Of a DNA stretch of 64,000 nucleotides, positions 18,345 through 64,000 are shown in pieces. Origin of the DNA: Gekko japonicus (Eukaryota); assembly GCF_001447785.1 (NCBI RefSeq), contig NW_015174352.1, positions 62,001 through 126,000 on the forward strand, in the 5' to 3' direction. Under the pieces are notes generated by a model, which was not told the origin of the DNA, made no database searches, and saw nothing but the letters and a program-made list of their open reading frames with translations. The position numbers and the translations under genes are program-made. Position 1 is the stretch's first letter, and each line of letters begins with the position of its first letter.

Positions 18345-18876
18345 TCTATATATCTAATAGCCAAGTTGCCCCCTGAGTGCGGATCGCTAAATCAGCGCTC
18401 CAGGGGCACTTGGGGGGGAGGGGGAGGTTTGTGCACACGTGGGCCAGTCCCAACGTGTGCACAAAAATCGAAAAAGTTGAGAAAAAATTCGGGGGGATGT
18501 TTAAATCCCCCCGAAAGTGACAGAGCGTCCCCTGCGCATGCGCAGGGAACGCTCTGTAGCTGGTCGCGCCTCCTCCTCCTCCTCAAAGCCGGACTGGTGG
18601 GGGGAACCGGCCTTGCCGCCGCCGCCGAGCCCAGCAAAGGGGGGGGGGAGGACCAGCCTNNNNNNNNNNNNNNNNNNNNNNNNNNNNNNNNNNNNNNNNN
18701 NNNNNNNNNNNNNNNNNNNNNGGCCTCGCCGCCGAGCCCGGGTCAGAGCCGGGCGGGGTGGGGGGTGGAGGACCGGCCTCACCGCCGCCGCAGCAGCCTC
18801 GGGGAGATTGAGGGGGGGGGATGGAGGAGATGGAGCTCTTCTCCCCCCCCCGCGAGTATCGCGGGTCCCCCTCTTG
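18345..18876 (+). mobile_element. Non-autonomous Helitron (contains an assembly gap)
   Basis: A|TCTATATATCTAA start; subterminal hairpin CCCGCGA-GTA-TCGCGGG (18849-18865), then CTTG|T, a variant of the CTRR end. Confidence 0.75.
18660..18721. other. Assembly gap
   Basis: Run of N. Confidence 1.
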
Positions 18877-34411: not shown

Positions 34412-34922
34412 NNNNNNNNNNNNNNNNNNNNNNNNNNNNNNNNNNNNNNNNNNNNNNNNNNNNNNNNNNNNNNNNNNNNNNNNNNNNNNNNNNNNNNNNN
34501 NNNNNNNNNNNNNNNNNNNNNNNNNNNNNNNNNNNNNNNNNNNNNNNNNNNNNNNNNNNNNNNNNNNNNNNNNNNNNNNNNNNNNNNNNNNNNNNNNNNN
34601 NNNNNNNNNNNNNNNNNNNNNNNNNNNNNNNNNNNNNNNNNNNNNNNNNNNNNNNNNNNNNNNNNNNNNNNNNNNNNNNNNNNNNNNNNNNNNNNNNNNN
34701 NNNNNNNNNNNNNNNNNNNNNNNNNNNNNNNNNNNNNNNNNNNNNNNNNNNNNNNNNNNNNNNNNNNNNNNNNNNNNNNNNNNNNNNNNNNNNNNNNNNN
34801 NNNNNNNNNNNNNNNNNNNNNNNNNNNNNNNNNNNNNNNNNNNNNNNNNNNNNNNNNNNNNNNNNNNNNNNNNNNNNNNNNNNNNNNNNNNNNNNNNNNN
34901 NNNNNNNNNNNNNNNNNNNNNN
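34412..34922. other. Assembly gap
   Basis: Run of N after (TA)n. Confidence 1.
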
Positions 34923-40337: not shown

Positions 40338-40556
40338 GACTCTGAGTTTAGTAATGCTGATCAGATGGATCTGTATGACGATGTGCTAGCTGCCAGTTCC
40401 CAGCCTTCTGAAAGCTGTACCAGCAGTTCTGAGCCACCACCTGAAAGCCGTCAAGAACAATCTCCCAAGCCAAACAGCAAATCGCCTGCCATCCTGTACA
40501 CCTACAGTGGACTGCGTAATAAGAGAGCTGCTGTTTATGTGGGCAGCTTTTCCTGG
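40338..40556 (+). CDS. CPSF7: CPSF7 coding exon 2
   Basis: [41 protein letters not shown]; 219 nt; TAG acceptor and GTGAGT donor. Confidence 0.98.
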
Positions 40557-41475
40557 GTGAGTGTGTTCCTCGTTCAAGATAGGAAGTAAAGGGTACAGCA
40601 GATTTACTCTGTCCTGGAAGTTCTTGTTGCATACGTCTTACTTCTTACTGGTTTTGCAGCCAGAGTTATAAACAGCAATTCTTGTTGCATAAAGATGATC
40701 TAACTGCCACTTGCTTTTTATGTAGAACCACAGTTACCAATAGAGCAGTGATCCATGCCTGTATAATGGCTCAGGTAACTCGGTTAATGTTCACCAAAAT
40801 AGACGTATGGTTGTCTGAGAATGCTTTACAGCAGAAATACTTTATTTGCATTATTTATTGTAAGCCACCATGAGTCTCTGTAGAAAAAGCCAGGTCCTGT
40901 CTTGAGGAAAGAGATCTAGACTGGCACAAAAAATCAGAAATATAAACCATGATGATTCCACAGAGAGTATAAAATATAGGTGTTTTTACAAATTTGCTGA
41001 TAGTTAAAAATGTGCTGGAACCAGCAGTTGGACCCTTGTATTGGGATTCAAGGAGTGGGATCCTGTGAACTGTGAGTTCAACAAGCAGATCTTTCCCTTT
41101 CCAAAGCAGCCACTATGACCCTTAGAGGCTTAGTGTGGTTTGGGAACTGTTGTGGCCAAAACGTTTCACAGTATGGGAGGCTGCAAGAGGGGTAATTGTT
41201 CAAAATCACCCCCCCTTCCACCAGTAAAGCACTCACATCAATGGGAGCTTTACTGATGGAGTGATGATTTTGCTGCCGCGCCCCCCCCCCCACACACGTA
41301 CTGTAGCCCTCTGTGCTGTACAGGTTTTATCTATGAGGATTCATCAGTGATGCTTTTTCCAGGATCATAGGGATTCTGTGGGAAAGGCAAGTCAGGGAAG
41401 AGTCACATCTGAAAGGACAGGGATTCAGCCCAGGGTCTGTACACTGTACTGATGGAAGTCAGGTAGTATAATTAA

Positions 41476-42394
41476 CTAGGAAAAAGGCCTAGAAAGAGGC
41501 TGTGGGTTGTAGGCAGGTGCCCTGGCCTTGGACACTCAGTGTCAATTTGCTGTGGTAACCTCAGCAGGGTATAATGACACTGAGTCCGCCATTTTCTCCA
41601 GAGGAACTGATCTCTGCTACCTAAAGAACAGTTGTAATTTTGAGTGATCTCCAGCCCTCACCTGGAGATTGGCAACGATGGTTCCCCAGAAGGGAATAGT
41701 TGGTTTGGAGGGTGGAGTCTATGTCTTTGTACCTGTCCGAGGTCCCACGCCTCCTGAAACCTCACCCTCTCTAGGCTCCATCCCTCACATCTCCAGGAAT
41801 TTCCCACCTGGAGTTGGCAACCCTGTCTCCTTCCCACCCAATCATCAACCTACCTTTCTTTCCCCCTCACTCTTCGGCTTTCCACCCCCACACACCTGCA
41901 GCCTCTCCCCTGCTCTGAAGCCCTGACTGCTACGTCACATTGGCTGTCAGACGGGGGCCACCTCAGCAGCATATAAGGATACAGAGCCCACCATTTTCTC
42001 CAGGGGAACTGATCTCTGCTGTCTGGAAAGCAGTTGTAATTCTGAGTGATCTCCAGCCCTCACCTGGAGATTGGACACATTTTACCTCAGAACAGCAAAA
42101 CTGTTTAGAATGTTAGAGGCAAAAGCCAATCAAGTTACATATGCAAATGACCTCTGTGTTCCGAGGCAGAAGCCAATGAGGCTGCATATGCAAATAACCT
42201 CTGTGTTCTGACTGGCTGTGGGGGGAGAGAATTAGCAAAATGTTTAGAATGTTGGAGGCAGGACTCAGGCAAAGCAGCCAGTGGATAAGGAGACCCTCTG
42301 AATGACAGATCAGAGAGCGAACTGATTTTGGAGCGTGTGGAATGTTCTAGAGAAGTGCCACCACCATTCGACTTTTATTTATAAGGGAGATAGA
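41476..42394 (-). mobile_element. Non-autonomous Helitron carrying hAT-MITE fragments
   Basis: On the minus strand A|TCTATCTCCCTTATAAATAAAAG...GGCCTTTTTCCTAG|T; internal hAT MITE pieces at about 41590-41825 and 41990-42075. Confidence 0.78.
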
Positions 42395-42744
42395 TACCTG
42401 AGGAAATCAAATTGTATGGAGTGGAGGGAAATAACTGCTTTTCTCTGTTCCTTTATCTAGCATTCATTTAGAAAGATCTCTGTTTCATGTACATCAGTTT
42501 AGAAGTGGTATGTTCTTGATTAAAGATATGCTATGTTTTTTGCCTCCTCCAGCTCATGGGAGCATATGTTCTAGATGGAGGTTAGATCATACATTCTTCA
42601 CTAGATTGTAATGGTGACCATAAGGGAGTTTGAGAAGGGAGAGCTTTGGTGATCCTTTACTTCCATTACTAACATGCAGGGGTGGGAAACTGTGCAAATG
42701 GCTTCTGGTTATAACACGGTACTGTTACACTTGTTCATATGCAG

Positions 42745-42848
42745 TGGACAACTGACCAGCAGTTGACTCGAATAATCCGTTCGGTGGGTGTTTATGATGT
42801 GGTGGAACTCAAGTTTGCTGAGAACAGAGCCAATGGCCAGTCCAAAGG
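42745..42848 (+). CDS. CPSF7: CPSF7 coding exon 3 (RRM)
   Basis: [34 protein letters not shown](G); 104 nt. Confidence 0.98.
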
Positions 42849-43235
42849 GTGAGTACTGTGAGGCTTCTTCATGAAAAAGGGCCAGTTTTGAGTGATTATT
42901 GTGGAAGTATGAAGAGTATGCTTGCTGATAGGGGACAGTGTGCTTGCTGATAGGGGATGCACATGGATATGCTTTTAAGATTGCCTAAAAGGTCACTTTA
43001 GTTGTCTAGTCTTAAATCCTGTCCAGGCTGAATGCCATCTTCTACGAAGTTTGACACATGATCCCAGAAGGAGATACATGTTGTCCAAATGCACAGTAGT
43101 TTAGTGAATTTGGAGAGAATACAAAGTATGAAGGCCTGCGTCACCATTTTTTCCCTGAGATACTTTTTAGGTCATGTTCATTAACAGATGTTCCTTTACA
43201 TTCTTCAGTTGATTATCATTTGGCTGTCTGTACAG

Positions 43236-43381
43236 GTATGCAGAAGTTGTGGTTGCCTCTGAAAACTCTGTCCACAAACTTTTGGAGCTGCTACCAGGAA
43301 AAATACTCAATGGAGATAAGGTGGAGGTGAAGTTGGCTACCCGGCAGAACCTTGCACAGTTTGAAGCGCAGGCTCGAAAAC
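43236..43381 (+). CDS. CPSF7: CPSF7 coding exon 4 (RRM)
   Basis: [48 protein letters not shown]; 146 nt. Confidence 0.98.
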
Positions 43382-46147
43382 GTAAGTTAGCTGAGGGTTT
43401 GAGGAATTGGGAAAATGGGAGGGGATTAGGGAGAGAATTTCTGAGAATCCTAGTATTACCAGACAAACAATTTAAGCTGCAGTTCTGTACCTGTGAATAC
43501 TTAGAGTGTCTGTTTATTTTTTTCCAATTATATTGCTGCTGTGTCTTAGTAGAGCCTGACTAGTCTTTATGATCCTCTTAGGTTCTCATATAATATGATG
43601 ATCCCTCATAGTTTCTTGCTTCTCCTTTTCCAAAATGAATGGGCTTAAACTCTTCAGACTGCTATTATAGCTAACACCCTCCATACCTATTAATAGCTTC
43701 TCTGTAGGTCTTCTCGAAAATTTGTACGTGCCTGAAGAGGTAAGGTGCCCAGTACTAGATGCAGTACTCCATCTGGGGTCTCACCATGGCCCTTGTTTAA
43801 TGGCATTATATGCTCCTGTTTGTTGTGTTGATGACCCATGGAGTATTATGCTGTTGGAGGCACCATCTTTCTCATATGTACAAGAAAACTTTGATTATCT
43901 GACACCATTGTAGATCCTATGGTCATTAGTAGTAGAAGTATTGCATTCATTGTCTTGACCAGGTTTAAGATGTGTTGCTAACTCATACCACCACTGTGTT
44001 CTTGTGATAATTGCAGCTAACTTTAAAATCTCTGGCTTTATGGCCTCAGTAGCTGTAGCATCAGTTTTCTTTTACTGCCTCCAGGTTTTCTACAGTAATA
44101 CCTGCAAATTGGTACTAGAAGTAATGTTCTTCTTAACTGGACTAACGTAACACTCATGTTATCTGTGGTAGGGGTATCATCAGCCAGTGTTGCTGAATCC
44201 TGAGATGAAGCAGAGCTGCTGTTTGCCCTGATGAAAGCTTTTCCCTGTGAAAAACTGCTTAAAGGGCTTATCTTGTCTTCACTAGGAGGTCGCGCTGGTG
44301 AATGGCAACGTCTGACAGTAACCATGGCACGTCACCATTTTTGACAAGGCCTTCGTAAATGACTTCTACCACTTTGTGATTCCTCGCCCAAAGGGCCTGA
44401 GAAATACAAAATTGTTGTTTTTAGTGATCATCTTTTTATTCTGCCTCTCCCTACCCTCAACATGGCTTACAATAAAACAAAAACCAGTATGATAAAGAAT
44501 GCACATGTAACACTATGAAGTTCCATTTATTATCTCCTATTTATTACAGGGACAAGCTAAAGTGGTTACACACCAGTAATCGCAAAGTGAAGTATTAATA
44601 TAATTCAGAAACTTATTTATTTTTGAACATGAATGTAAACTATTTACATTTTAAGAGTATCCTGGATTTGCTGTCACCAGTTCTTAAGTGATAGTGGTAT
44701 AACAGATTTCTGCTGCCATGTTGTTGTGTGTCATTGGGTTGTGTGATCATGTATGTTTTTAAAAATACATGTCCCAGCTATATTTGCAGTTTAGTTTTTT
44801 CCCAGAATTATGCCAGGTAAGGGGCAAGATTGCAAAATATGCTCCCTAGTTCTGTTGTCTTTACATTCTCTTCAGAAATCTGTGACTTTTAAATTTTGTT
44901 TGACGTACTCTCTTTAGAATAAGGCTCTTAATAAAGCTTTGTACAAACCTCTCATTTTAAACTTTAAGCTTACTGTATATTAAAATTCCCACCTAGTCAA
45001 ATTAAGATGACGCACAACTTTTAAAAAATCCTGGATTTAAAAATGGCTTTTACTCAGATATTGTAAATACTTGTAAATACTTCCTGTAATGCCCTTCCAT
45101 ATGATTGCCATCTTGGTTTGTGTTGAATAAAGTTGACTCTAAGTACAGTACTTTGGTCAGCATGGTTTTATTATTTCTGTGGGGACCATAATGCCTCATT
45201 GGGAAGAAAAGAAGTGAAATGTTTTCAAGCCACAGTGATTTCATCAGTACCAAGCAGCTGGCCCATGGACCGGCAGTAGATAGTATAAAGCACCCTTGTA
45301 ATGCAACCCCCTACAGTTCTCTGTTGCCAAGTACTTATGAAAGTTATAGTTACTTACCCCCATATTTTCAGTGTTGTTTTTGTAAAAAGAATGTACGTAT
45401 TGGAACTGTGCATTGTCTGCTGCAATTTAACTCTTTTAACAGCATTATTTGAAGAGTATGATGCTGTAGTAGTAGTATTACTTAAACTCTACTGACCAAG
45501 TGTTAGTATTTTTGGACAATTGTTTGGATAGGTTCAACATTCTTCATTCAGTTGATCTTATGCTATGTAGGAAGGGCAACAATTTTGTTTGCTATTTGGA
45601 TAAGCAACTAAAATTTAAAATTATCAAGGCACCCCCTTTTTAATGGTCTCCTTACAATCCCCTGAGATGAGAGGAAGAGTATATGTGGGGTACTTTTGTT
45701 TTCAAGAGATTGCTTTGTAGTAGTAGATTACCTTTAGCAGGCTGTAAAAATAATTAGTTACTATAGAAAGTAATGCAGTGACTACTGCAAGCAGTATATA
45801 CATATCTATATCTCTATAATGCAAACTTGTTTTTAAATATCGAAGTGTATCTTCATATAATGCAAGGTTATAAATACTATCATTTTAGACTTTTATACTT
45901 CACTTTCTGTCTGCTAAGGATGCTCTTGGAAGAACAATAAACTTGGTTGTGTACTTTATTTAAGCAGTACATTTCTTTAGATAATGGTTGTAATGGATAG
46001 TTCAGCATCCCTCCAGAATGATGTTATTTGTAACAATTTAGGATCACAGTGTTTAGATTTCCATGTGCTAGAAGCCTTATAATAGAAAAAGAATAGGAAT
46101 CAGTGGTATTCCATTAATGTCATAAGAGAAAGCCATTCTGCATAATT

Positions 46148-46375
46148 GAGAACCAGTGTGGTATAGTGGTTAGAGTGCTGGACTGGAATGGTAGGAGACA
46201 CAGGTTCAAATCTCCATTGCTATGGAGGGGCTTCCATGGTTGACCTTGGGCCAGTTATATACTGTCAGCCTGGCCTTCCTAAAGGTTATCATTAGGATAA
46301 AATGGCAGAAAGGAGAATACTGTAAGCTGTGTTGGGAATCCATTGGTGAGAATGGCAGGGTATAAAGTAAATAAA
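46148..46375 (+). mobile_element. Older Squam3-like SINE
   Basis: GAGAACCAGTGTGGTATAGTGG A box, GGTTCAAATC B box, GGGTATAAA..TAAATAAA tail. Confidence 0.72.
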
Positions 46376-47919
46376 AGAGTGCTTTTACAGCAGAGAATTG
46401 TTTCTATTCAATAGCTTATGATAAAGCTTGAGACACTTTTCATTATTGTTCAAAAACTCGTTTACAAGCTTACCGTCTTTTTAGACACAACCTATAATAT
46501 TAATTTATAGGTGAACTTTATTTTAAATTGGTCTAGACAAAGGCCCCAGTTCATTTCACATTAGTTGTGGGACAAATTATTTGAACTTGTTCCATAGGTT
46601 CAGTTTCATTAGCTTTAACTAACTTTTGCTGGATTGAACTCAAAGCTCTTATGAGCTTTAGATTCATGTATGTCTTTTGGGCTTTCAACCTAGACCTCTT
46701 CCATTCAGTCACTCCCTAAAAGGCAGTGCTGGAAGTTATTGTATATAACTGTACATGGGAAGATGTTTCTGCCGGCGTGCTGTTTAGTATTATAGTAGAA
46801 CTAGAAGCATTTTTCCTTGTTTTTCCACCACAGTGTGACCACTCTTGAGGTCTTTAAACCCTTTGTTAGGGGTATATGTTGGCTTCACTTATTGAAAATC
46901 ATCTGTTTTAGTTGCTATTGTATCTAGGAGTGAGTTGTTAAGTGTTCCCCTAATATTTATAATTAATCTTTAGACGACCTGTTAATCAGGCCACCTTTCT
47001 GGTTTGTCTTTTGGGTTCCTTTTGCGATTTCTTTATTCTTTAAACTAAATTCAACACACTTGTCTGTGATAGGATTTGGACTTTCTGGTTTTATCTTTTT
47101 GGGGTGTGTCCTTGACTTACCCTATGACTCATTTTTTTTTTTAAGTATTTTGTCTTTAAAAGTTAATGTTCTGCAATTGGTATTGTGAGTACCAATTTAA
47201 CTGTGTAAGTTCTTTCTGGTTAAGCTTTTTTACATAGAAAGGAATATTACATTCTTATTTATGTTTACTGTGTCGTCACATAGTTGTTCACATTATACTG
47301 TAGATAAACCTTGCCTCAGCTAAGAATGGGCCAAGTGACCTTAGGGGCTGAGAGGTTTTACCTCCTCTGTCCACAGAATGACGATCATGTTGGCCTCTCT
47401 CACAGAAGTACTGTCAGGACAGCTGAGAATGTTTGCATGTGTGTGTGTGCCTTGGATAGTCAGTTTAAAATCACTGCCAATTATACTCTGTAAACTAATC
47501 TTAACATTTAAATCCTCAAGGATACCAAGTATGTAAATGATGGGAAATGGCTCCCCTCATGCCGCTTCTATGCTGATGCTGAAAATTATTTCATGTAACA
47601 TACTGTGATCTTGGATGATATTGAGCAATCCGTTCACATTGTAGCTACTTCCACCAGGTAGCCTGCAGCACTAATTTCCAGTGATGTCTGGAAGGTAACT
47701 AGATCTTTCTTGATGTTTACCCAAGTCAGGTCCAAGACCGTGTGCGAGCATCCTTTTCGCACAGTGTGAGAGATGGGAGTTCCCTTCTTTGGGCAAACGT
47801 TGAGGTTGTGTGTGAGTTTGGGAAGTGGGGGATGTTGTGTCAGGAAACTGGCTGGCTCTCCCGTGCCTCCCCAACCTCTTCAGTGTTCCGTGCTTTTCCT
47901 CTTCTGTGATGTCTGACAG

Positions 47920-48328
47920 GCGTGCCTCCGAGGGCTCACTCCAGGGATTCCTCAGACTCAGTAGATGGCCGAGCCACTCCAACAGAGAATGCAGTGCCAC
48001 CACCACGCATTGAGAAGCCTCCTTCTGTTTTGCCTTTCTTCAACCGCCCTCCTTCTGCTCTCCCTCTCATGGGGATACCACCTCCACCAATACCGCCACC
48101 TCCACCACTTTCCTCAAGTTTTGGGGTCCCACCTCCCCCACCAGGCATCCACTACCAACACCTAATGCCCCCTCCTCCTCGACTCCCCCCCCACCTAACT
48201 GTGCCACCTCCGGGGGCAGTGCCACCTGCTCTGCACCTCAACCCAGCCTTCTTCCCCCCACCCAATGCGGCAATGGGCCCTCCACCAGATGCCTACAGTA
48301 AGGCCTCAGCTCCATATAACCACAGCAG
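47920..48328 (+). CDS. CPSF7: CPSF7 coding exon 5 (proline-rich)
   Basis: [49 protein letters not shown]; 409 nt. Confidence 0.98.
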
Positions 48329-48777
48329 GTGAGCATAAGTCTATACTTGGGGGTTTGAGAAGAACTACTTGAAAGGGGGCGATGTGAATCCTATTCATAT
48401 CTCTTGGTTAGTGAGGCTTCGGTCCTAATTCACAAAAGGGGCCTTGTCTACTTGATTGTGTACCAAAACTTGTGTTTCACTGGCGGCTGGGCATTGAAAG
48501 AATGACCAGTGTGCTACAGATGCCTGCATGCCACTCATTGGTGGCCTTTCTCATTAAAATATAGTAGGGAAGCACTGTCAGCTTGAGTCATAGCCCTTAG
48601 TAAACTGTTTGACACCTACTTTGGGCAGGAGGAGAACTTGGCTAGCTGTGTAGTGGTTATTTTTTTTCTAAATCCTCAAATTGCTACGTATGTAAACAGG
48701 AAACTTTGTTATAGTGCTGCCTGTATGTATTAGCTTTCTGCATCGGAGTAATGAACATGTGTATGTATGTCCTGCAG

Positions 48778-48896
48778 CCGAGAATTAGGCCCATTGCCAC
48801 CCCCTGTCAGTGAAGCTGAATTTGAAGAAATCATGAACCGGAACCGAGCAATTTCCAGCAGTGCCATTTCCAAAGCTGTGTCTGGTGCCAGTGCAG
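48778..48896 (+). CDS. CPSF7: CPSF7 coding exon 6
   Basis: [39 protein letters not shown](G); 119 nt. Confidence 0.98.
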
Positions 48897-48985
48897 GTAA
48901 ACCGCAGCGGGTTGCTGCCACCTTCTTCTGTTCTTAACCATTGTCTTTAGCCTGATCACTCTGCTTTTGCTCTCTTCTGTCACAG

Positions 48986-49163
48986 GGGATTTTAGTGATG
49001 CCATTGAGACTCTGCTGACAGCCATCGTTGTGATCAAACAGTCCCGTGTTGCAAATGATGAGCGCTGCAGAGTCCTTGTCTCTTCACTTAAGGATTGTCT
49101 CCATGGCATTGAAGCCAAGTCCTACAGCATGGGGAGCAGCAGCAGCAGCAGCAGTTCCTCCAG
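48986..49163 (+). CDS. CPSF7: CPSF7 coding exon 7
   Basis: [49 protein letters not shown](S)9; 178 nt. Confidence 0.98.
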
Positions 49164-49351
49164 GTAAAGCTTCACTAGGTAGGATTGTTGCAGTAATCAA
49201 TAGGATTTATTTTCCAGCATCAAGGAATAGTCTGGTTCCCTTCCTAGGTTATGTACAGCCAGGTAGAAATATGTGCTTGTTCAAAGGAAGACTCATGTGT
49301 ATGTTTTAGTGGTATTTCTTCAGAAACCCAGATGTCTGATTTATCTTCCAG

Positions 49352-49520
49352 AAAAAGGCACCGGTCTCGGGATAGGTCACCCAGTCGATCCCGTGAAAGC
49401 AGCAGGAGGCACCGAGATGCAATCCATAATGAAGATCGTCATGAGGACTATTTTCAGGAAAGAAGCCGGGAGCATGAGAGACACAGAGACAGGGACAGAG
49501 AAAGAGACCGGCATCACTGA
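49352..49520 (+). CDS. CPSF7: CPSF7 last coding exon (RS/RD/RE domain)
   Basis: [35 protein letters not shown]; probable donor AGG|GTGTGT about 21 nt after the stop. Confidence 0.97.
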
Positions 49521-56843: not shown

Positions 56844-57146
56844 ATGGCTTCACTGGAATTTGGCCTTGTCAATGCTGCCAACAGATACCTGACTGCAGAA
56901 CCTTTTCGTTTCCAGGTGACAGCCACAGGCTTGCAGCTGAAGCCCCGCCAGGTGTGGATTCTTCAGTTTATGGCCCCACAGGGAGCTGGGGCCGCTGGCC
57001 CAGGAGAAGGAGCTGGCCAGAAACTCCACCTGCTCAGTGCCCTGAAGCGCTACTTGGCAGCCGACGCTAATGGCAAAGTCACGTGTGATCAGGACCACCC
57101 AGGGCCTCAGACCATCTTCCTCCTGCAACAGTATCCAGATGGCAAG
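56844..57146 (+). CDS. Fascin-family actin-bundling protein, exon 1 (beta-trefoil 1)
   Basis: Perfect Kozak ACCATGG; MASLEFGLVNAANRYLTAEPFRFQVTATGLQLKPRQVW..RYLAADANGKVTC..PDGK aligns to FSCN1 [36 protein letters not shown]; donor AAG|GTGCGG, phase 0. Confidence 0.93.
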
Positions 57147-57249
57147 GTGCGGTCATGCACAACTGTCATATCCCCAGCTGTATCGCAGTAGTTGCCGCGT
57201 CCAGAAGGAGGGTGGATTTGGGTGGTGGTAAAATGTCCCTTAGGTAGAA

Positions 57250-57430
57250 CGTGATACTTTCCACTTGCAGACATTAAACCTCTGAATGCCAGTGCTGGGA
57301 GGCAACCCCAGGGAGGCCCTCTGCGCACTGTTTGGACACCCAGGGCAACTGGTTGGCATCTGCCTGGAGCAGGAGGCTGGCCGAGATGGACCCTCACTGG
57401 TCTGATCCAACAGAGCACCCCTTATGTCCC
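57250..57430 (+). mobile_element. Old CR1 3' tail fragment
   Basis: GATGGACCCTCACTGGTCTGATCCAACAGAGC..CTTATGT, a typical CR1 3' terminus. Confidence 0.65.
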
Positions 57431-57853
57431 TCCCACGGCTACTTTCTTGTCTAATGGTGTACATGTTTTGTCTTCCTCTATTGGTTTCTGTTCAAGAGTC
57501 AACTGAGAGTGCTGAGTTTGAGAATTATTGTTGAGGGGCCAGAATGTCTTTGGCAAGCCCCTTATACTAGTGACTGGACTCCAGGAGTTGTGGCCAGGAG
57601 GCAATTTCCCATGCTCCCAGCTTGATGCTGTAATGTGCAACTTAGAGTGTGTAAAGCATACCAGGATTAAGTAGGTTCTTTTGGTCTTACAACTTTCTTG
57701 TGTTCTACTCGAGAAGCCACTGCGATGGTCTGCAAAGCCTGACTTGGCCCCTGCTGGCCAAGCAGACTGGTAGTCGACTACTGTGGTTTAGTGGGACATG
57801 GACGAGCTCAAACGATTCACCGTAGGCCCTGCTTGCCAGGATGTACCGTAGGT

Positions 57854-58177
57854 CAGTGTTTTTCATCTGGGGGTACACATACCACTGGTGGGATGCAGAA
57901 GCAGTCTAGGTGGGACATAGGGTTTTCATAACAATTATTAAGAATTCACTCTCCTTCAGTCCTCATGTCTACCTACTAATGTGATGTACTGTCTCCTGCC
58001 GGCCCTACTTGCCACAGATTATCCATCTATGACCTTTTGGCATGGTAATGATACTGACAGAATACCCGTAAACATGTACCTTTCTTTCATAGGAGAAATA
58101 GTCTTTTCCCCCAGTCGTGGTGGGACCCATGTTTTTTTGATAGAGTGATGGCATGAAAGGTTGAGAACCACTCCCCT
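57854..58177. mobile_element. Degenerate hAT-Charlie-like MITE
   Basis: CAGTGTTTTTCATCT.../...AGGTTGAGAACCACT termini. Confidence 0.5.
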
Positions 58178-58395
58178 AGTCTAGTGACCTTGTCACTCTT
58201 TTCTTTATGGTCCTGGAACCAACGGGATAAACGTGACATGATAGGAAAGATGCAGTCCTAGCAGCTATATAGGCATGAGGAGGTAGTTGGTGATGTGGTG
58301 ATTATAAAACCAGTGGGCACCAGAGCAGTTTCGCCTTCATTTTTAATGAGAACGTTCCTGTTCTTCCTGTTTTGGGTGTCTCTCCTTCCTGTCAG

Positions 58396-58645
58396 GTGTC
58401 TCTGCAGAATGAGCAGTCTAAGCGCTACCTGGGTGGGGCAGAGGAAAACGTCACCTGCTTTGCTCAGGCTGCCACCGAAACGGAAAAGTGGACCCTGCAC
58501 CTGGCAGTGCACCCCAATGTCGCCATGTACAGCCCCAACAGGAAGCGCTATGTGCGCTGTGATGAGAAAGCTGGGGCACTGCGCTGTGACCGTGACATGC
58601 CCTGGGGCGCTGAATCAGTCATCACTGTCTACTATGATTTCAAAG
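58396..58645 (+). CDS. Fascin-family protein, exon 2
   Basis: CAG acceptor; VSLQNEQSKRYLGGAEENVTCFAQ..EKWTLHLAVHPNVAMYSPNRKRY..DRDMPWGAESVIT aligns to FSCN1 [48 protein letters not shown]; 250 nt, phase 1 out. Confidence 0.95.
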
Positions 58646-60357
58646 GTGGGTGTAGGAATTTCCCCACCTTTCTTCCTTTGCATAGGATGTCACGGGTGAG
58701 TTCAAGATCATGCTCATGCCATCAAATCCTGTTCTAAGAAATGCATGACTGAAAACTCAGAAACATGCATGCAGCAGGTAGAGAGGACTTAACTAAGGTC
58801 ATAAGCAACCCTGTTTCCTTTCCAGCTGAGAGCTGAAAGGCATCTGAGGCAAAACATGCTGCATTTCACAGAAGTCTATTTAAAACGGAAATAGTCAATA
58901 CATCTCAGAAAAATTAATGTAAAGGCCTCAGTCCAACTAACACAAATCAGTGCTATATCCTGTTGATAACAAGATACCTGGTGATTTTAAGTGGATTTGG
59001 GTCAACTTCTAATAGTAGCAGCTTTACTGCTCGGCTCTGGTCTGCCAAACTTGAATGCTCATAGTTTCCATTCATTGCTGCTCTTCCCAAATGGTTTGCT
59101 GCATATTAAATATGCATTTTCCACTATTTGCTGCATGTAGTACACCCAACCATCATCAAGATTGTGCTTCAGTTCCAAAGAAGTCATATTTCCCTAGGCC
59201 TCAACCTGCTTTATTTATCTCTACAGGAAAAGGTAAGTGGATAGCAAATGCAAGAGCTTGTTTTCTGAGTGACAAGATGGGTCACGGACAATTCTTGGAT
59301 TTTGTGTGTGTGACTATAAGAGGAGAAGTTTCTTAATGAAGTTTTGCTTCAGGGGAAGGAGAAAGGTAGTGAGAGCACCTTGCTGGTTTCCAGCACTTAA
59401 AAAAAAAAGTCTGGATTAGTGCAATGGAAAATTACGTTATTGCAACTTGACAAAACTTGAGTGAGTTTCACCTAATTGCTTAAATATACATGAGACATGC
59501 TTTGACTGTACAGAAAGCCCTCTTCGGTAGTTAAGCAGGTAATCTGGTTTCAGAGATGGTTGACAGACTAGTCCTCCTCCTGTTGCTCTCTCCACACACC
59601 GCAGTTAGTGACAAACCATTTTCAGGAGGAGTGTTGGTTCTTTGAGCCGTACTGGCTAAAATCCAGACTTCCAGAGAAGTGTATAGCCAAGATTATTGTG
59701 ATAGATGTGTGCATGGGGGGGAGGGGCAATGGTCCAGCAACTGCCCTGTCATCACAAGTCAGTGAAGCTCCCCCCACTTTCATGTGCCCAGTTGGATCCA
59801 CAGGTGATATCTGTGCTAGCAGAATGGCACTTCTGTTGGTGGGAGGGGGCCGTGTTTGCTAATTCCTCCCCATCCTGCAGGCCTTCTCTCGTTCTCCTGC
59901 ACTGTTTGTGAGGGCCCCCTGTCTCCCAGGAACAGAATTTAAGGGGGCTCAGGAGAAGTGGGGAGGCAGGAAACTCCTGCTCTGCTCCTCCTGCTCTACT
60001 TAGATTCAGTTTATTGTGTGGCAAAGGGTATTTAACCACCTTTATTGCATTAACATTCACGTAAGCCTTTGAAATAAATAATTATGGACTTCTGTCTTTT
60101 CCCCCACTGCAATGTCCTTCCACTTAAAGAACCTTTTCATTACTCTAAAAAAAGAAAGCATAAAGCTTTTTTTCTGGACCCACAGCACAGATCTTTTTAA
60201 CCTTTAGTTAAAAAGGAAAAAAGCCAACAGGCCTTTCCTTTGCAGGGTCTGCATTTCAGATATTTCTCATCCAAAACAGTGCCTGAAATTTGCTTATGGA
60301 CTGGAAATACCCAAAATGAAGAAAGGCATGCCTGAAATTTTCAGAGTTGGGGGATTA

Positions 60358-60524
60358 CCGTATTTTTCGGACCATAAGACGCACCTGACCTTAAGACGCA
60401 CCTAGTTTTTAAAGGAGGAAAACGGGGGAAAAAATATTCTGAACCTTCGGTCCATAAGACGCACTCACTTTTCCTCCCACTTTTTTTGGAAGAAAAAGTG
60501 CGTCTTATGGTCCAAAAAATACGG
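60358..60524. mobile_element. Tc1/mariner-superfamily (Tc2/pogo-like) MITE
   Basis: TIR CCGTATTTTTCGGACCATAAGACGCAC and GTGCGTCTTATGGTCCAAAAAATACGG; TA TSDs. Confidence 0.9.
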
Positions 60525-62599
60525 TATTTCTGCTGGTTTCAATGAGCGGTACACCTGCCATCTGGACTTCAGAGGGCGACAGGCCTGGCTTCTAGGACTG
60601 GAGGTCAGGTCTACAGCCCATTAAAAGCTGTGGAAGTAGAGCTGGTCAGTGCTCCCAGACCTGAAATAATTTCCTAAAATAGATTTTCTAGATGGTACCA
60701 GTACTCACAATATTTCAGGAAAATGATAATCTTGCCCTTTCTGAAATAATGAAACAAAGTTAAAATTCAGTTTTTGAAGCACGCACCTATGTGAGCGCAT
60801 CTCATTTTACTATCCTTGCTCCCGTTGCCTACAGAAATGATTGTATGAGCCCTTAGTTCCATTTCCCTCAAACTATGGGGATGACTGTCAAGAGTATGAA
60901 AGGAAACCAGAAGTGGCAGGGTGACATTCCAGAGATGCAGAGAATCTTGTGTCAGGTAGAGAGAGCCTTTCTCACTGCACCTGTTACTTTCCTCTAAGGA
61001 TGGCCTTTGGCTTTACTCTGATGCTTGCCTGTGGGAATAATATCCTATCTAGAGCTCCTTGCATACAACAGTGAGCTGTGCACATAACTGCACATGAAGA
61101 GCTCAATGCATAAAAACCATGGTAGTATTAAGGCGGATGGAGGGTGGGCAACTCAATAGTGTTTCTATGAAAAAGAAGTATTTAAAAGTTTGAGCAAAAG
61201 TGCCCTAGTTGTGAGTCTGTGTGGGCATGTTTCAAGCCTTCAGTCCATGTTTTTGATATGTAAATAAGTTAAGCTTGAGTCATTTGCATCTCCTCAATAG
61301 GTCTTCAGTCGGAGACAAACAATGCTGAAAGAAGGAAATTTTTCTGCCCCATACCAGGTGAATTCAAATTCTGCTTACCCAGGAATCTCTGTGAATGGCA
61401 CAGATTTCAATTTATTTAACAGCACTAAATAGCCTGGGTAACTGATAGTGTTCTTACTGCAAATCATTATTCTATCAAAAAGATCCATGCATAGAACAGC
61501 AACCTCGCCAATCCTGCATTAGACCAAAATAAACTCCCAAATGCTGCTTCCGGGGGCGGGGGTGGAGTACCCCCAAAAGCAGTATGGTTGGGGGTTGGAG
61601 GGCTGTCATGGAGGATGGAAATGGCAAAAATTGCCCCCCAACCCACAGATTTACTTTCTGTATTAGAACCAAGGGCAGGGTATGGAATGTCTACACACAT
61701 CTGTATCCTGGAACACATTCAAGCGCAAGGCATCCACTTCAGCCTCCCTCTGTGATGCAGATCAAGGCATGTGTCTACATTCAGTGATAACAGGAATGCA
61801 CATCTCTACTGCATTTGTGTTGTTGTTCCCAGCTGTATCTGAATTGGGGATGTCTAGCTCTTATGTCATGAATTTGCCCCCAGTTAGCAGAAAAATAGGC
61901 TCGACAAGAAGACTGACACAGTGTTTAGAACCCAAGTGGTGCAAAGCAAATATGAACTTCATTTCAAAAGTAGCAAATGCCATCAGGAGTCTTTTGGCAC
62001 CATGAACACTTAACACAATTTTATTCCACCATAAGCTTTTATCAGCCCACTTCTTCAGGCTGTGACTGAATTGTCTCTCTGCATACATTTTACATAGGCT
62101 TGAAAGAAAACAACCAGCCAGGACACAGAATCATAAAATGCAGGGACGCCTGGCCCCATCACTTTTGATCGTCAGGAGGCAGCTGAGGACATTTTTTATA
62201 TAGGACTGTATTTGACTAATTTAGTTTGCATTTAGTGGCAGTCCTAATTGAGATTGTAAACTGACACTTTTATGTGTTTGATAACTGAGGTTTTATTTGT
62301 ATTGTAAGCCACCTTGAGTGCCACAAGGTAGAAAGGTGACTAATGAAGGATGTAAATAAGTACAAAGTAAAATGTGATTATGTAAAATTGCGATCTAATC
62401 AGGATGAAACACAGAGGTAATCTACTGGCTATGGTAAGCTAGTTGACATCTGTAAGGATCACAGGTTTCATTAAATAGTCATTGTTATAGTGAGATAAGA
62501 CTCCTAAGTCCCCTTGGGGGAGGGGTGTAGTGTTAAACTTTGGAATAAAGTCCAGTTCAACCGTTTCACATTGGAGACTCCCTTTGAAGTTCTTTTGTT

Positions 62600-62718
62600 A
62601 AATTTTATTTTAAATTTTTATAGGAATACAGACTAAAGAAAGGAGGTAAGGGGAAAAGAGGAAAATAAAATTATAAGAACACAATACAGAGGGCAATTTT
62701 TACAAATATTAAGGACAA
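62600..62718 (-). mobile_element. Very short L1-type 3' tail insertion
   Basis: 15-bp TSD TGAAGTTCTTTTGTT at 62585-62599 and 62719-62733 flanking an A-rich tail. Confidence 0.7.
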
Positions 62719-63298
62719 TGAAGTTCTTTTGTTGAAGAGCTGTGATTTTCAGGTCAAACAAATGAACTGGATTTTTCCAGCTCTTCCACTGGCTTAAAGG
62801 AGGAGGGGGACAGTTTTGACCTCCAAAAAAGGTGTGCTGGGTGTATGGGAGTCACATAGACAAAGGTTACCTGGGGTGGGGAACAGCTGTGAGGAAAGGA
62901 ATTGTGCAACAGCAAGCAGGAAAGCTGGACAGGATCCTTCCCATAAAACAAAATAGACTACTATGCCTAACCCTCTGGAATTATTTTGAAAAATAAGATC
63001 CAGTGAATCTCAAGTAACACTTTAAAACAAGAGACTGAGACCCACTACACTATCTTAGAAAGGATTTAAGAGATTGTGGATGAGAGGAATACCGTGGGAA
63101 AGGTTACAGGAAGAAAGAACAAATGTGGGTGCTGGAAAGTGTTTGGATATATGGCAGTTCAGGAACATCTCTGCGGTAAAATTGCACTGAAATGATGACT
63201 GGGCATCATGCTAATTTGCTGCCATTTATTTGGACACTGCTTCCTGGAAGTAAGTGCCTGTTGTTCTCTCACATTGTCTCTCCTGCCTTTGTCTTCAG

Positions 63299-63580
63299 TG
63301 AAGAAGTATGGATTGAGGACTGGGGCTGGCAAGCTGTTGGCTTCTGATGGCTCACTGGTGCCGGACGTCACCCCACAAACTCTGTATTCCCTGGAACTGA
63401 ACAATGGCTTAGTGGCCCTGAGGGATGAAGAAGGGAAATACTTGACTGCACGCGAGGGTGTTATGAAAACAGCAAAGATGGACAAGCCTGGACGAGATGA
63501 ACTCTTCAGCATAGAAGCCAGCCCTGCCCAGGTTTCAATGCGCTCCTCTTCTACTAACAAGTTCATCTGCTGTAGGCCAG
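63299..63580 (+). CDS. Fascin-family protein, exon 3 (gene continues beyond the right edge)
   Basis: CAG acceptor; KKYGLRT..DGSLV..YSLELNNGLVALRDEEGKYLT..KPGRDELFSIEASPAQV..ICCRP(G) aligns to FSCN1 ..[43 protein letters not shown]; donor CAG|GTGAGA, phase 1. Confidence 0.95.
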
Positions 63581-64000
63581 GTGAGATTTTTAAAAATCAG
63601 TATTTTCTGTGTTGTGTTTGTGAAGACTTGGAGCATGCATCAGCTGAGCTGGTATGTAACACGGTGAGCTTGGAAGTTAAAACAGTCCCGAGCAGACCAA
63701 GCTGAGTGGTCCAGGGACTTCTGGTTGAATTTATATCTGCAGGATCTTTAACGGAATGCCCTGTTTACTAAGTTGCTAGACTACATTTTTCCCAGGTGTG
63801 CCGTCAAAAGGGGAGGGGGTTTCCTTACATTCACATACAAGTTACAGTTAGGTCAAGTAATAATGTTGTGTATATATAACATTTTTAAGGGGGGTTGTCT
63901 TCCCTTTGAGTACATATACCATATGTCTCTTTCATTTTTGTATCATAGTTGGTATGGTGATAAAGTGTGAAATAGCAGAAAACCCCTTAAAAAAACAACC

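What the first reader, a model, noticed from the sequence alone, without database searches (positions are those of the whole stretch)
56844..63580. Candidate fourth vertebrate fascin at the CPSF7 locus, with a distinct exon structure
Seen: three open, phase-compatible exons (303+250+282 nt, 278 codons plus 1 nt) encode beta-trefoils 1-2 of a fascin, starting about 2.9 kb after the CPSF7 poly(A) region. Known (from memory): human FSCN1 lies by ACTB, FSCN2 by ACTG1 and FSCN3 on 7q32, and none lies next to CPSF7/SDHAF2, where TMEM216 follows. FSCN1/2 encode this whole stretch in one exon of about 830 nt. Here it is split by two extra introns (after codons 101 and 184), yet the third intron falls at the conserved phase-1 ..RQG/..RPG position. 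Inference: this is an old, intron-rich, divergent paralog lost in mammals, not a retrocopy or an ortholog of FSCN1-3.
Basis: partly seen in the sequence, partly recalled or inferred. Interest (0 to 1): 0.88.

Follow-up and report, generated by a model that had tools for sequence, protein, structure and literature searches.

The report
Extra fascin gene beside gecko CPSF7
The window holds the intact first half of a real gecko gene for an actin-bundling fascin that belongs to an old, little-noticed fascin lineage found from sharks to reptiles but not in mammals, birds or teleosts; whether mammalian FSCN3 is its much-changed counterpart could not be tested.

Summary
Observation confirmed. Three open, phase-compatible exons with a Kozak ATG and AG/GT sites each match Pfam Fascin. 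They align in order with human fascin-1 residues 11-277. They are 94-100% identical to RefSeq 'fascin-like' of the gecko Heteronotia, and CPSF7 lies upstream on the same strand.

The gene belongs to a clade with full support on the tree. Members were found in chondrichthyans, sturgeon, coelacanth, two basal frogs, turtles, crocodilians and about 18 squamates. No member was found in mammals, birds or teleosts. The clade lies outside FSCN1/FSCN2, and turtles carry both it and FSCN2. Its two extra introns are shared with turtles (intron 1) and with sharks and rays (intron 2). The intron after ..RPG is common to fascins.

I also found two alternative in-frame cassette exons in intron 2. The PKC serine Ser39 is lost in amniotes. 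The trefoil-4 basic residues of actin-binding site 1 are lost in the whole clade.

The 'fourth fascin' reading is only partly supported. No mammalian FSCN3 sequence could be fetched, so orthology to FSCN3 is untested. RNA support is very thin. Databases already list the gene as 'fascin-like'. No paper found names it. This scan noted the same stretch once before (s1-818773).

The parts
56844..57146 (+). Exon 1: start codon plus 101 codons. It encodes most of beta-trefoil 1 and includes a Gly/Ala-rich insert.
   Evidence: ATG in ACCATGG with a GT donor at 57147. Pfam Fascin E 3e-8. Matches human fascin-1 residues 11-100 at E 4e-18. 94% identical to Heteronotia P0181 residues 1-101. The Chelydra fragment P0154 reads on past the same ..YPDGK boundary.
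58396..58645 (+). Exon 2: 83 codons plus 1 nt. It encodes the end of trefoil 1 and the start of trefoil 2, and keeps the RKR motif (fascin-1 R149-R151).
   Evidence: AG acceptor and GT donor. Matches fascin-1 residues 102-181 at E 9e-23. 100% identical to P0181 residues 102-184. About two RNA reads in run X7.
59161..59232 (+). Candidate alternative cassette exon E2a: 72 nt, 24 codons, phase 1 to 1.
   Evidence: AG acceptor and GTAAGT donor, open in frame. 70% identical to the 24-residue insert of the Euleptes RefSeq model P0187, at the same exon 2/3 joint.
61301..61357 (+). Candidate alternative cassette exon E2b: 57 nt, 19 codons, phase 1 to 1.
   Evidence: AG acceptor and GT donor, open in frame. 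100% identical to the 19-residue insert of Eublepharis P0185, and 42-53% identical to the inserts of Python, Erythrolamprus and Lacerta models.
63299..63580 (+). Exon 3: 2 nt plus 93 codons plus 1 nt. It encodes the rest of trefoil 2 and ends at ..CCRPG, the intron position common to fascins.
   Evidence: AG acceptor and GT donor. Matches fascin-1 residues 185-269 at E 6e-23. 96% identical to P0181 residues 186-278. 37 ORF-type fragments from many fascins end their homology at this position. Ray and shark isoforms P0202 and P0278 skip exactly this exon. One X1 contig stops matching at 63583 and runs on unlike the window for 68 nt.
40338..49517 (+). Context: coding exons of the upstream neighbour CPSF7, from the start of the RRM to the arginine/serine-rich tail.
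   Evidence: The ORF at 43213-43560 hits PDB 3N9U_C (CPSF7) at E 8e-22. The ORFs at 40338-40586, 47910-48329 and 49248-49517 read as the RRM start, the proline-rich region and the RS-like tail (my reading).

Best explanation
The window holds the promoter-proximal three constitutive exons, plus two optional cassette exons, of a functional gecko gene for a four-beta-trefoil fascin. The gene belongs to a separate fascin lineage, here called clade 4, which databases label 'fascin-like'. This lineage split from the FSCN1/FSCN2 line early in vertebrate history and is most simply read as a retained whole-genome-duplication paralog. It survives in cartilaginous fishes, sturgeon, coelacanth, basal frogs, turtles, crocodilians and squamates. 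It was lost, or changed beyond recognition, in mammals, birds and teleosts. I take it to be distinct from mammalian FSCN3; that step is inferred, not shown. The likely mechanism is a monomeric actin-filament cross-linker with the fascin-1 fold. The basic residues of the N-terminal and trefoil-2/3 actin-binding surfaces are kept (K22R, K41, K43R, R149-R151, R271K, K353, K358R). Ser39, the PKC off-switch of fascin-1, is Gln in squamates, so that control is absent. Ser274 is Cys. The whole clade has also lost R389, R398, K399 and K471 on trefoil 4. Its first actin-binding site is therefore remodelled, and its bundling strength or its partner may differ from fascin-1. Optional 19- or 24-residue inserts fall in a loop of trefoil 2. 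The gene, the clade, the exon structure and the fold are shown. Actin bundling, regulation, tissue of expression and independence from FSCN3 are inferred.
For: The exons and their fascin identity rest. Exon-by-exon identity to gecko RefSeq models is 94-100%. The full-length ortholog P0181 aligns end to end with human fascin-1 at E 3e-105. Its AlphaFold model has pLDDT 92.4 and pTM 0.88, and it superposes on fascin-1 structures with TM 0.84-0.91. In the careful ML tree the clade has 100/100 support and a stem of 0.90, and it is sister to lamprey + FSCN1/2 at 96/88. In the 68-row quick tree the clade has SH-aLRT 100, its internal branching is broadly in line with the species tree, and each window exon falls among geckos. 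Pelodiscus and Lepidochelys hold both FSCN2 and this gene. Intron positions are shared with turtles, snakes, the alligator and rays/sharks. The residue table and clade signatures (W101 to V in 30/30, LRG to LQS, C-terminal LWEY to F-x-Y/F) come. The papers read state three vertebrate fascins (PMC7698196, PMC8616296), and no paper holds FSCN4 or fascin-4.
Against: Mammalian FSCN3 is missing from every tree, so 'fourth' is not shown. The taxon ranges look complementary: the clade is absent from mammals, and FSCN3 is, as far as I know, mammalian. That pattern is what orthology would also give. The nr name of the Callorhinchus member is 'fascin-3'. RNA support in this species is almost nil: about two reads on exon 2 in partial reads of three RNA runs. 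Only the first 278 codons are in the window, so an intact downstream half in this genome is assumed from orthologs. No actin assay exists for any member, and half of actin-binding site 1 is not conserved.
Confidence: 0.58

Rival explanations
1. The clade is the non-mammalian ortholog of FSCN3 (testis fascin). In the mammalian stem the gene moved from the CPSF7 neighbourhood to 7q32 and evolved fast. On this reading there are three vertebrate fascins, not four.
For: No mammalian clade member was found in an exhaustive HMMER search or in two word-based searches. The clade sits where published trees, as I recall them, put FSCN3: outside FSCN1+FSCN2 on a long stem. Callorhinchus P0198 is named 'fascin-3' in nr. 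Three constitutive exons here, plus the four downstream exons expected from FSCN1's five-exon gene (PMC8616296), would give seven; from memory, FSCN3 has seven exons.
Against: Ensembl-derived UniProt names and RefSeq names give no FSCN3 name to any reptile, coelacanth or shark member. They are called 'Fascin-like domain-containing protein' or 'fascin-like', whereas bird FSCN2 does carry its gene name. No FSCN3 representative reached E 1e-3 with exon 3, although sponge, cnidarian and holozoan fascins did. From memory only, human FSCN3 keeps the ancestral Trp, the L-R-G motif and the W-E-F end, all of which every clade member from shark to gecko has lost. That would require three reversals. It is a lead, not a test.
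Confidence: 0.32
2. In this gecko the gene is a silent or decaying copy (a unitary pseudogene in the making): intact at its 5' end but broken or unexpressed downstream.
For: RNA runs X7-X9 give almost no reads on the exons. Exons 4 onwards are outside the window.
Against: There is no stop or frameshift in 278 codons. All six splice sites and the Kozak context are intact. Identity to Heteronotia is 94-100%, with exon 2 identical in protein, and the optional exon E2b is 100% identical in protein to Eublepharis. That fits purifying selection. Only 3-12% of each run was read and the tissues are unknown. One contig ends its match at the exon 3 donor.
Confidence: 0.06
3. It is FSCN1 or FSCN2 itself, moved next to CPSF7, or a recent lineage-specific duplicate or retrocopy of one of them.
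For: The best solved-structure match is fascin-1.
Against: Identity to FSCN1/2 is only 35-45%, against 94-100% to gecko and 40-57% to shark clade members. The clade has 100/100 support and lies apart from FSCN1/2. The same turtle species hold FSCN2 as well. Introns are present, and two of them are absent from FSCN2-type ORFs.
Confidence: 0.02

Closest known systems
Fascin-1 (FSCN1), human, PDB 1DFC / 3LLP / 8VO5
   Same: Four tandem beta-trefoils of about the same length. The gecko ortholog aligns end to end (E 3e-105, 38% identity, TM 0.84-0.91). Basic residues K22, K41, K43, R149-R151, R271, K353 and K358 are kept as K or R. The phase-1 intron after ..R-Q/P-G is shared.
   Different: Ser39 is Gln and Ser274 is Cys in squamates. 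R389, H392, R398, K399 and K471 are lost in the whole clade. W101 is Val, and the C-terminal LWEY is changed. Amniote members carry a Gly/Ala-rich insert in trefoil 1 that is modelled with low confidence. There are two extra introns and optional cassette exons. The genomic neighbour is CPSF7; from memory, FSCN1 lies next to ACTB.
Fascin-2 (FSCN2, retinal and hair-cell fascin)
   Same: A vertebrate fascin paralog with tissue-restricted use. It is present in the same reptile lineages (Crocodylus P0286, Pelodiscus P0287).
   Different: It groups with FSCN1 and lamprey fascins, not with this clade. Bird FSCN2 fragments encode positions 4-279 in one uninterrupted ORF. It keeps Ser39 and the trefoil-4 basic residues.
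Fascin-3 (FSCN3, testis fascin of mammals; Tubb et al. 2002, cited in PMC7698196)
   Same: It is the divergent third fascin, stated as 29% 'homology' to fascin-1 in PMC7698196. As I recall, it lies outside FSCN1+2 in trees, has seven exons and is restricted to mammals, which would complement this clade's range.
   Different: It could not be compared here. It is not next to CPSF7 (memory). Databases do not link it to the clade. From memory, it keeps the motifs that the clade has lost.
RefSeq/UniProt 'fascin-like' models (e.g. Heteronotia XP model P0181, Gopherus XP_030416713, Latimeria H3A7Q2, Callorhinchus J3SI32)
   Same: This is the same gene family. The window's exons match P0181 residues 1-101, 102-184 and 186-278.
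   Different: These are automatic annotations without a gene symbol, an orthology call or a publication. Several are mis-joined or truncated at the exon borders.

Membership tests
Fascin family (Pfam PF06268; actin-bundling proteins of four beta-trefoils) | Fascin-domain sequence signature | tested here: met
   Exons 1 and 3 pass Pfam's gathering score (34.1 and 40.7 bits against 23.1). Exon 2, which is a piece of a domain, scores 21.9 bits. PDB fascin-1 hits are at E 1e-18 to 1e-23 per exon.
Fascin family (Pfam PF06268; actin-bundling proteins of four beta-trefoils) | Four tandem beta-trefoils in one chain of about 490 residues | tested here: inconclusive
   The window encodes trefoils 1-2 only. 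The 94-100% identical gecko ortholog P0181 has all four (E 3e-105 to fascin-1; model pLDDT 92, TM 0.84-0.91 to fascin-1). The downstream exons of this genome were not seen.
Fascin family (Pfam PF06268; actin-bundling proteins of four beta-trefoils) | Binds and bundles F-actin through basic surface patches | not testable with these tools
   Residue conservation is mixed. K22, K41, K43, R149-151, R271, K353 and K358 are kept as K or R. R389, R398, K399 and K471 are lost. This needs a co-sedimentation and bundling assay.
FSCN1 / FSCN2 orthology group | Falls inside the gnathostome FSCN1 or FSCN2 clade | tested here: not met
   It forms a separate clade with 100/100 support, and the FSCN1/2 + lamprey group has 98/95. 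SH-aLRT is 100 with wider sampling.
FSCN1 / FSCN2 orthology group | One large first coding exon covering trefoils 1-2 | tested here: not met
   Here this stretch is split after codons 101 and 184. Bird FSCN2 ORF fragments run uninterrupted over positions 4-279. This is indirect evidence, from read-through gene calls and not from genomic alignment.
FSCN3 orthology group (mammalian testis fascin) | Groups with mammalian FSCN3 in a tree | not tested
   No FSCN3 sequence could be fetched. It was absent from the 147 hits and.
FSCN3 orthology group (mammalian testis fascin) | Conserved neighbourhood (PAX4-FSCN3-ARF5 in human, from memory) | tested here: not met
   The upstream neighbour in the window is CPSF7. 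The downstream neighbour is not in the window. A move in mammals would explain this, so it does not exclude orthology.
Clade 4 ('fascin-like' of sharks to reptiles) | Signature residues: Val for fascin-1 W101; Pro in ..R-P-G at the exon 3 end | tested here: met
   The window reads ..YPDGK|VSLQ.. across the exon 1/2 joint and ..CCRPG at the end of exon 3. These states occur in 30/30 and 24/30 clade members, against 3/30 and 0/30 other fascins.
Clade 4 ('fascin-like' of sharks to reptiles) | Introns after codons 101 (phase 0) and 184 (phase 1) | tested here: met
   Both are present in the window. The same borders are seen in turtle fragments and alternative first exons, in snake and alligator single-exon ORFs, and in the exon-3-skipping ray and shark isoforms.

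The most novel reading that the evidence does not exclude
Jawed vertebrates ancestrally had a fourth fascin, separate from FSCN1, FSCN2 and FSCN3, that no paper describes. It has a remodelled first actin-binding site. In amniotes it has no Ser39 PKC switch. It has optional loop inserts made by alternative exons. It was lost independently in mammals, birds, teleosts and most frogs. It would therefore be a naturally 'unregulated' or differently targeted fascin, still at work in sharks, sturgeons, coelacanths and reptiles.
Probability: 0.55. Interest if true: 0.6.

Novelty: new member of a known kind. Interest (0 to 1): 0.5.

Why it matters
Reviews state that vertebrates have three fascins, and all functional work rests on the mammalian set. 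A fourth conserved lineage, about 450 million years old, would change the family's history. The scheme would become two duplications with lineage-specific losses. It would also supply natural variants at the very residues used to define fascin-1's actin-binding site 1 and its PKC control. If the clade instead proves to be the true FSCN3 ortholog, that is useful too. It would show what testis fascin looked like before its rapid change in mammals, and it would date a relocation. In either case the gene needs a name and an orthology call in reptile, shark and coelacanth annotations, where it now stands as 'fascin-like'.

Tried and rejected
FSCN3 retrieval failed four ways.
- The exhaustive HMMER search with exon 3 returned no FSCN3-like protein. 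I read all 147 hits and named the doubtful ones.
- A word-based search with turtle P0153 found none.
- A narrow-region search with Varanus P0177 at E up to 10 found none.
- A profile of shark and frog members found none.

Other steps that led nowhere or were left out:
- The ESM Atlas call listed a 'fascin-3' cluster no nearer than the FSCN1 clusters and gave no sequences.
I therefore have no loci of orthologs, no synteny, no direct intron mapping and no dN/dS.
- The papers by Tubb 2002 and Hashimoto 2011 are not held.
- The ohnolog database paper has no supplement held.
- Motif words recalled for FSCN3 occur in no paper.
- The careful bootstrap run of the 68-row tree did not finish in 709 s. 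I cite its quick version and the finished 43-row careful tree.
- The spliced three-exon model was never joined.
- Read laying was held to 6000 bases (57600-63599), so the exon 1-exon 2 joint was not covered.
- Proteins that look like human FSCN1 from metagenome or run contamination (P0030, P0039, P0040, P0079, P0233-P0236) were in the first overview tree and in a bulk blastp. After noticing this I left them out of the later trees and did not look up their contigs.
- A retrocopy reading and a relocated FSCN1/2 reading were rejected. The gene has introns, and it lies apart from FSCN1/2 in the trees.


Full report
1. THE OBSERVATION

The three exons exist as described. Exon 1 (56844-57146) opens with an ATG in the context ACCATGG and ends at a GT donor. 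Exon 2 (58396-58645) and exon 3 (63299-63580) both have AG acceptors and GT donors. The phases (0, 1, 1) give 278 codons plus one base, with no stop.

I searched each exon on its own, by reference, and never built the joined protein.
- Each exon matches Pfam Fascin.
- Each matches human fascin-1 chains in the PDB at E 4e-18, 9e-23 and 6e-23.
- The matches cover residues 11-100, 102-181 and 185-269 in order.
- This is far beyond chance.

The gene upstream on the same strand is CPSF7. The ORF at 43213-43560 matches PDB 3N9U chain C (CPSF7) at E 8e-22, against 1e-3 for CPSF6. Its last coding ORF ends at 49517. tblastn with full-length gecko orthologs finds nothing after 63580, so exons 4 onwards lie beyond the window.

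2. WHOSE GENE IT IS

An exhaustive HMMER search with exon 3 gave a tight top group at 59-80% identity. After a gap came ordinary fascins at 44% or less. The top group consists of RefSeq/UniProt 'fascin-like' proteins of turtles and a cobra, and the next entry is 'fascin-like' of sharks.

Searches with a full-length turtle member and with a shark/frog profile widened the set:
- about 18 squamates, several turtles and the alligator;
- the frogs Ascaphus and Discoglossus;
- the sturgeon Acipenser and the coelacanth Latimeria;
- many chondrichthyans.

No mammal, bird, teleost or neobatrachian frog member appeared.

The window's exons are 94%, 100% and 96% identical to residues 1-101, 102-184 and 186-278 of Heteronotia binoei 'fascin-like isoform X2' (P0181). 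They are only slightly less identical to Eublepharis, Euleptes and Sphaerodactylus. The window therefore comes from a gecko, and the exon model agrees with an independent RefSeq model.

3. PHYLOGENY

Careful ML tree (43 full-length fascins, LG+C20 PMSF):
- the clade has 100/100 support and a long stem of 0.90;
- it is the sister of the lamprey + gnathostome FSCN1/2 group, which has 98/95;
- the union of the two is supported at 96/88 and appears in 98% of bootstrap trees.

Quick tree (68 rows, adding crocodile and turtle FSCN2, frog fascin, sturgeon, coelacanth and more sharks):
- the clade keeps SH-aLRT 100;
- inside the clade, chondrichthyans, frogs, archelosaurs and squamates each form supported groups, in line with the species tree;
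- each window exon, entered as its own row, falls among the geckos;
- its bootstrap version did not finish.

Pelodiscus and Lepidochelys hold both FSCN2 and a clade member. The gene is thus neither FSCN1 nor FSCN2, nor a recent copy of either.

4. EXON STRUCTURE

Unspliced or mis-spliced gene calls in the protein collections still mark the borders.
- Bird FSCN2 fragments cover positions 4-279 in one ORF. This fits the single large first exon of FSCN1/2. FSCN1 has five exons (PMC8616296).
- Clade members instead break at 101/102. The Chelydra fragment P0154 reads through there, and Gopherus isoforms join an alternative first exon to ..VSLQ.
- They also break at 184/185, as shown by snake and alligator single-exon ORFs.
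- The ray Narcine isoform X5 and a Chiloscyllium model lack exactly the exon 3 equivalent.

The second extra intron therefore dates back at least to the common ancestor of jawed vertebrates; for the first I have evidence only from the window and from turtles.

Intron 2 holds two frame-preserving cassette exons with AG/GT borders.
- E2b (61301-61357, 19 codons) is 100% identical in protein to the insert of the Eublepharis model. It is 42-53% identical to the inserts of Python, Erythrolamprus and Lacerta models.
- E2a (59161-59232, 24 codons, GTAAGT donor) is 70% identical to the Euleptes insert.
- In the model of P0181 the insertion point lies in the turn between strands 177-182 and 187-191 of trefoil 2.

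6. FUNCTION

The ortholog P0181 aligns with fascin-1 over its whole length (E 3e-105). It folds with pLDDT 92.4 and pTM 0.88; only the Gly/Ala-rich insert (residues 48-55) is uncertain. It superposes on fascin-1 crystal and cryo-EM structures with TM 0.84-0.91.

Residues by fascin-1 numbering:
- Kept as Lys or Arg: K22, K41, K43, R149-R151, R271, K353 and K358.
- Ser39 is Gln in squamates, Val in turtles and the alligator, and still Ser in Ascaphus, sturgeon and one shark copy.
- Ser274 is Cys in tetrapods.
- Lost in every clade member: R389, H392, R398, K399 and K471.

The clade also has Val for the otherwise near-universal W101, and a changed C-terminal LWEY.

My reading is a fascin-type actin cross-linker. 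In amniotes it cannot be switched off through Ser39. The trefoil-4 half of its first actin-binding site is remodelled. Which residues matter is established knowledge from fascin-1 mutagenesis, recalled and not re-read. The activity itself is an inference.

7. EXPRESSION

Three RNA runs of the species were read to 3-12% of their depth.
- They gave about two reads on exon 2 and none on exon 3.
- One contig of run X1 matches 63431-63583 and then continues for 68 bases unlike the window. That fits use of the exon 3 donor if exon 4 begins GTG.
- X1 also covers intronic DNA, and it is not certainly an RNA run.
- The tissues are unknown.

Expression in this gecko is therefore not shown. The case for function rests on conservation.

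8. THE OPEN QUESTION: FSCN3

Every route to a mammalian FSCN3 sequence failed, so the tree that decides 'fourth fascin' against 'FSCN3 ortholog' was not made.

For orthology:
- The taxon ranges are complementary.
- The tree position is similar.
- The Callorhinchus member is named 'fascin-3' in nr.
- The exon count would probably be equal.

Against orthology:
- No pipeline name links the clade to FSCN3.
- FSCN3 did not reach E 1e-3 with exon 3, while sponge and holozoan fascins did.
- From memory only, FSCN3 keeps three ancestral motifs that all clade members have lost.

I put a separate fourth lineage at about 0.58 and FSCN3 orthology at about 0.32.

9. NOVELTY

The papers read state three vertebrate fascins (PMC7698196, PMC8616296). 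No paper in the library uses FSCN4, fascin-4 or 'fourth fascin'. Annotation pipelines, however, already predict the gene in dozens of species. This scan's note s1-818773, on the same stretch, had already noted the two missing serines. I file it as a new member of a known kind, of moderate interest.

Noticed in passing
window 60354-60527 (inside intron 2): An element of about 175 bp has inverted terminal repeats (taccgtatttttcggaccataagacgcac ... gtgcgtcttatggtccaaaaaatacggta). Depth there is 20-37x in the RNA runs and in the hundreds in run X1's contigs. Many variant bases and loose ends occur at both borders. It looks like a multi-copy MITE- or SINE-like repeat and is not part of the gene.
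   Followed up: partly
proteins P0195/P0272 (Pristis), P0199/P0271 (Pristiophorus), P0201/P0276 (Narcine), P0268/P0156 (Carcharodon); no loci: Elasmobranchs hold two copies of the clade (A and B). The B copies lie on a long branch (0.35), and Callorhinchus groups with the A copies. This points to a duplication within cartilaginous fishes, or an older one with a loss in chimaeras.
   Followed up: partly
proteins P0202 (Narcine isoform X5) and P0278 (Chiloscyllium): These isoforms or models lack exactly the 94-residue exon 3 equivalent, in frame. That removes most of trefoil 2. Whether this is real alternative splicing or a prediction artefact is unknown.
   Followed up: no
window 1007-3169 (+): Long ORFs in several frames read like reverse transcriptase/RNase H, integrase and a chromodomain-like tail of a Ty3/gypsy-type retroelement, broken by frame changes. 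I only observed this.
   Followed up: no
window 18660-18721 and 34412-34922: Two runs of N (62 and 511 bases).
   Followed up: no
proteins P0125, P0098 (the cluster of P0125 includes Oscarella 'fascin-like' P0251): These sponge-type fascin-like proteins carry a long acidic, proline-rich tail that ends in C-I-I-L or C-T-I-L. This looks like a CaaX prenylation box and is unusual for a fascin.
   Followed up: no
proteins P0030, P0039, P0040, P0079, P0233-P0236 (JGI/IMG and Logan): These FSCN1 proteins match the PDB human fascin-1 sequence over their N-terminal part but come from metagenome or run assemblies. They are probably host or human contamination. I left them out of the later trees and did not look up their contigs.
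   Followed up: no
window 63431-63583, run X1 record 8: A 221-base contig matches up to three bases past the exon 3 donor and then differs for 68 bases. It may be an E3-E4 spliced read-out, but the loose letters were not shown.
   Followed up: no
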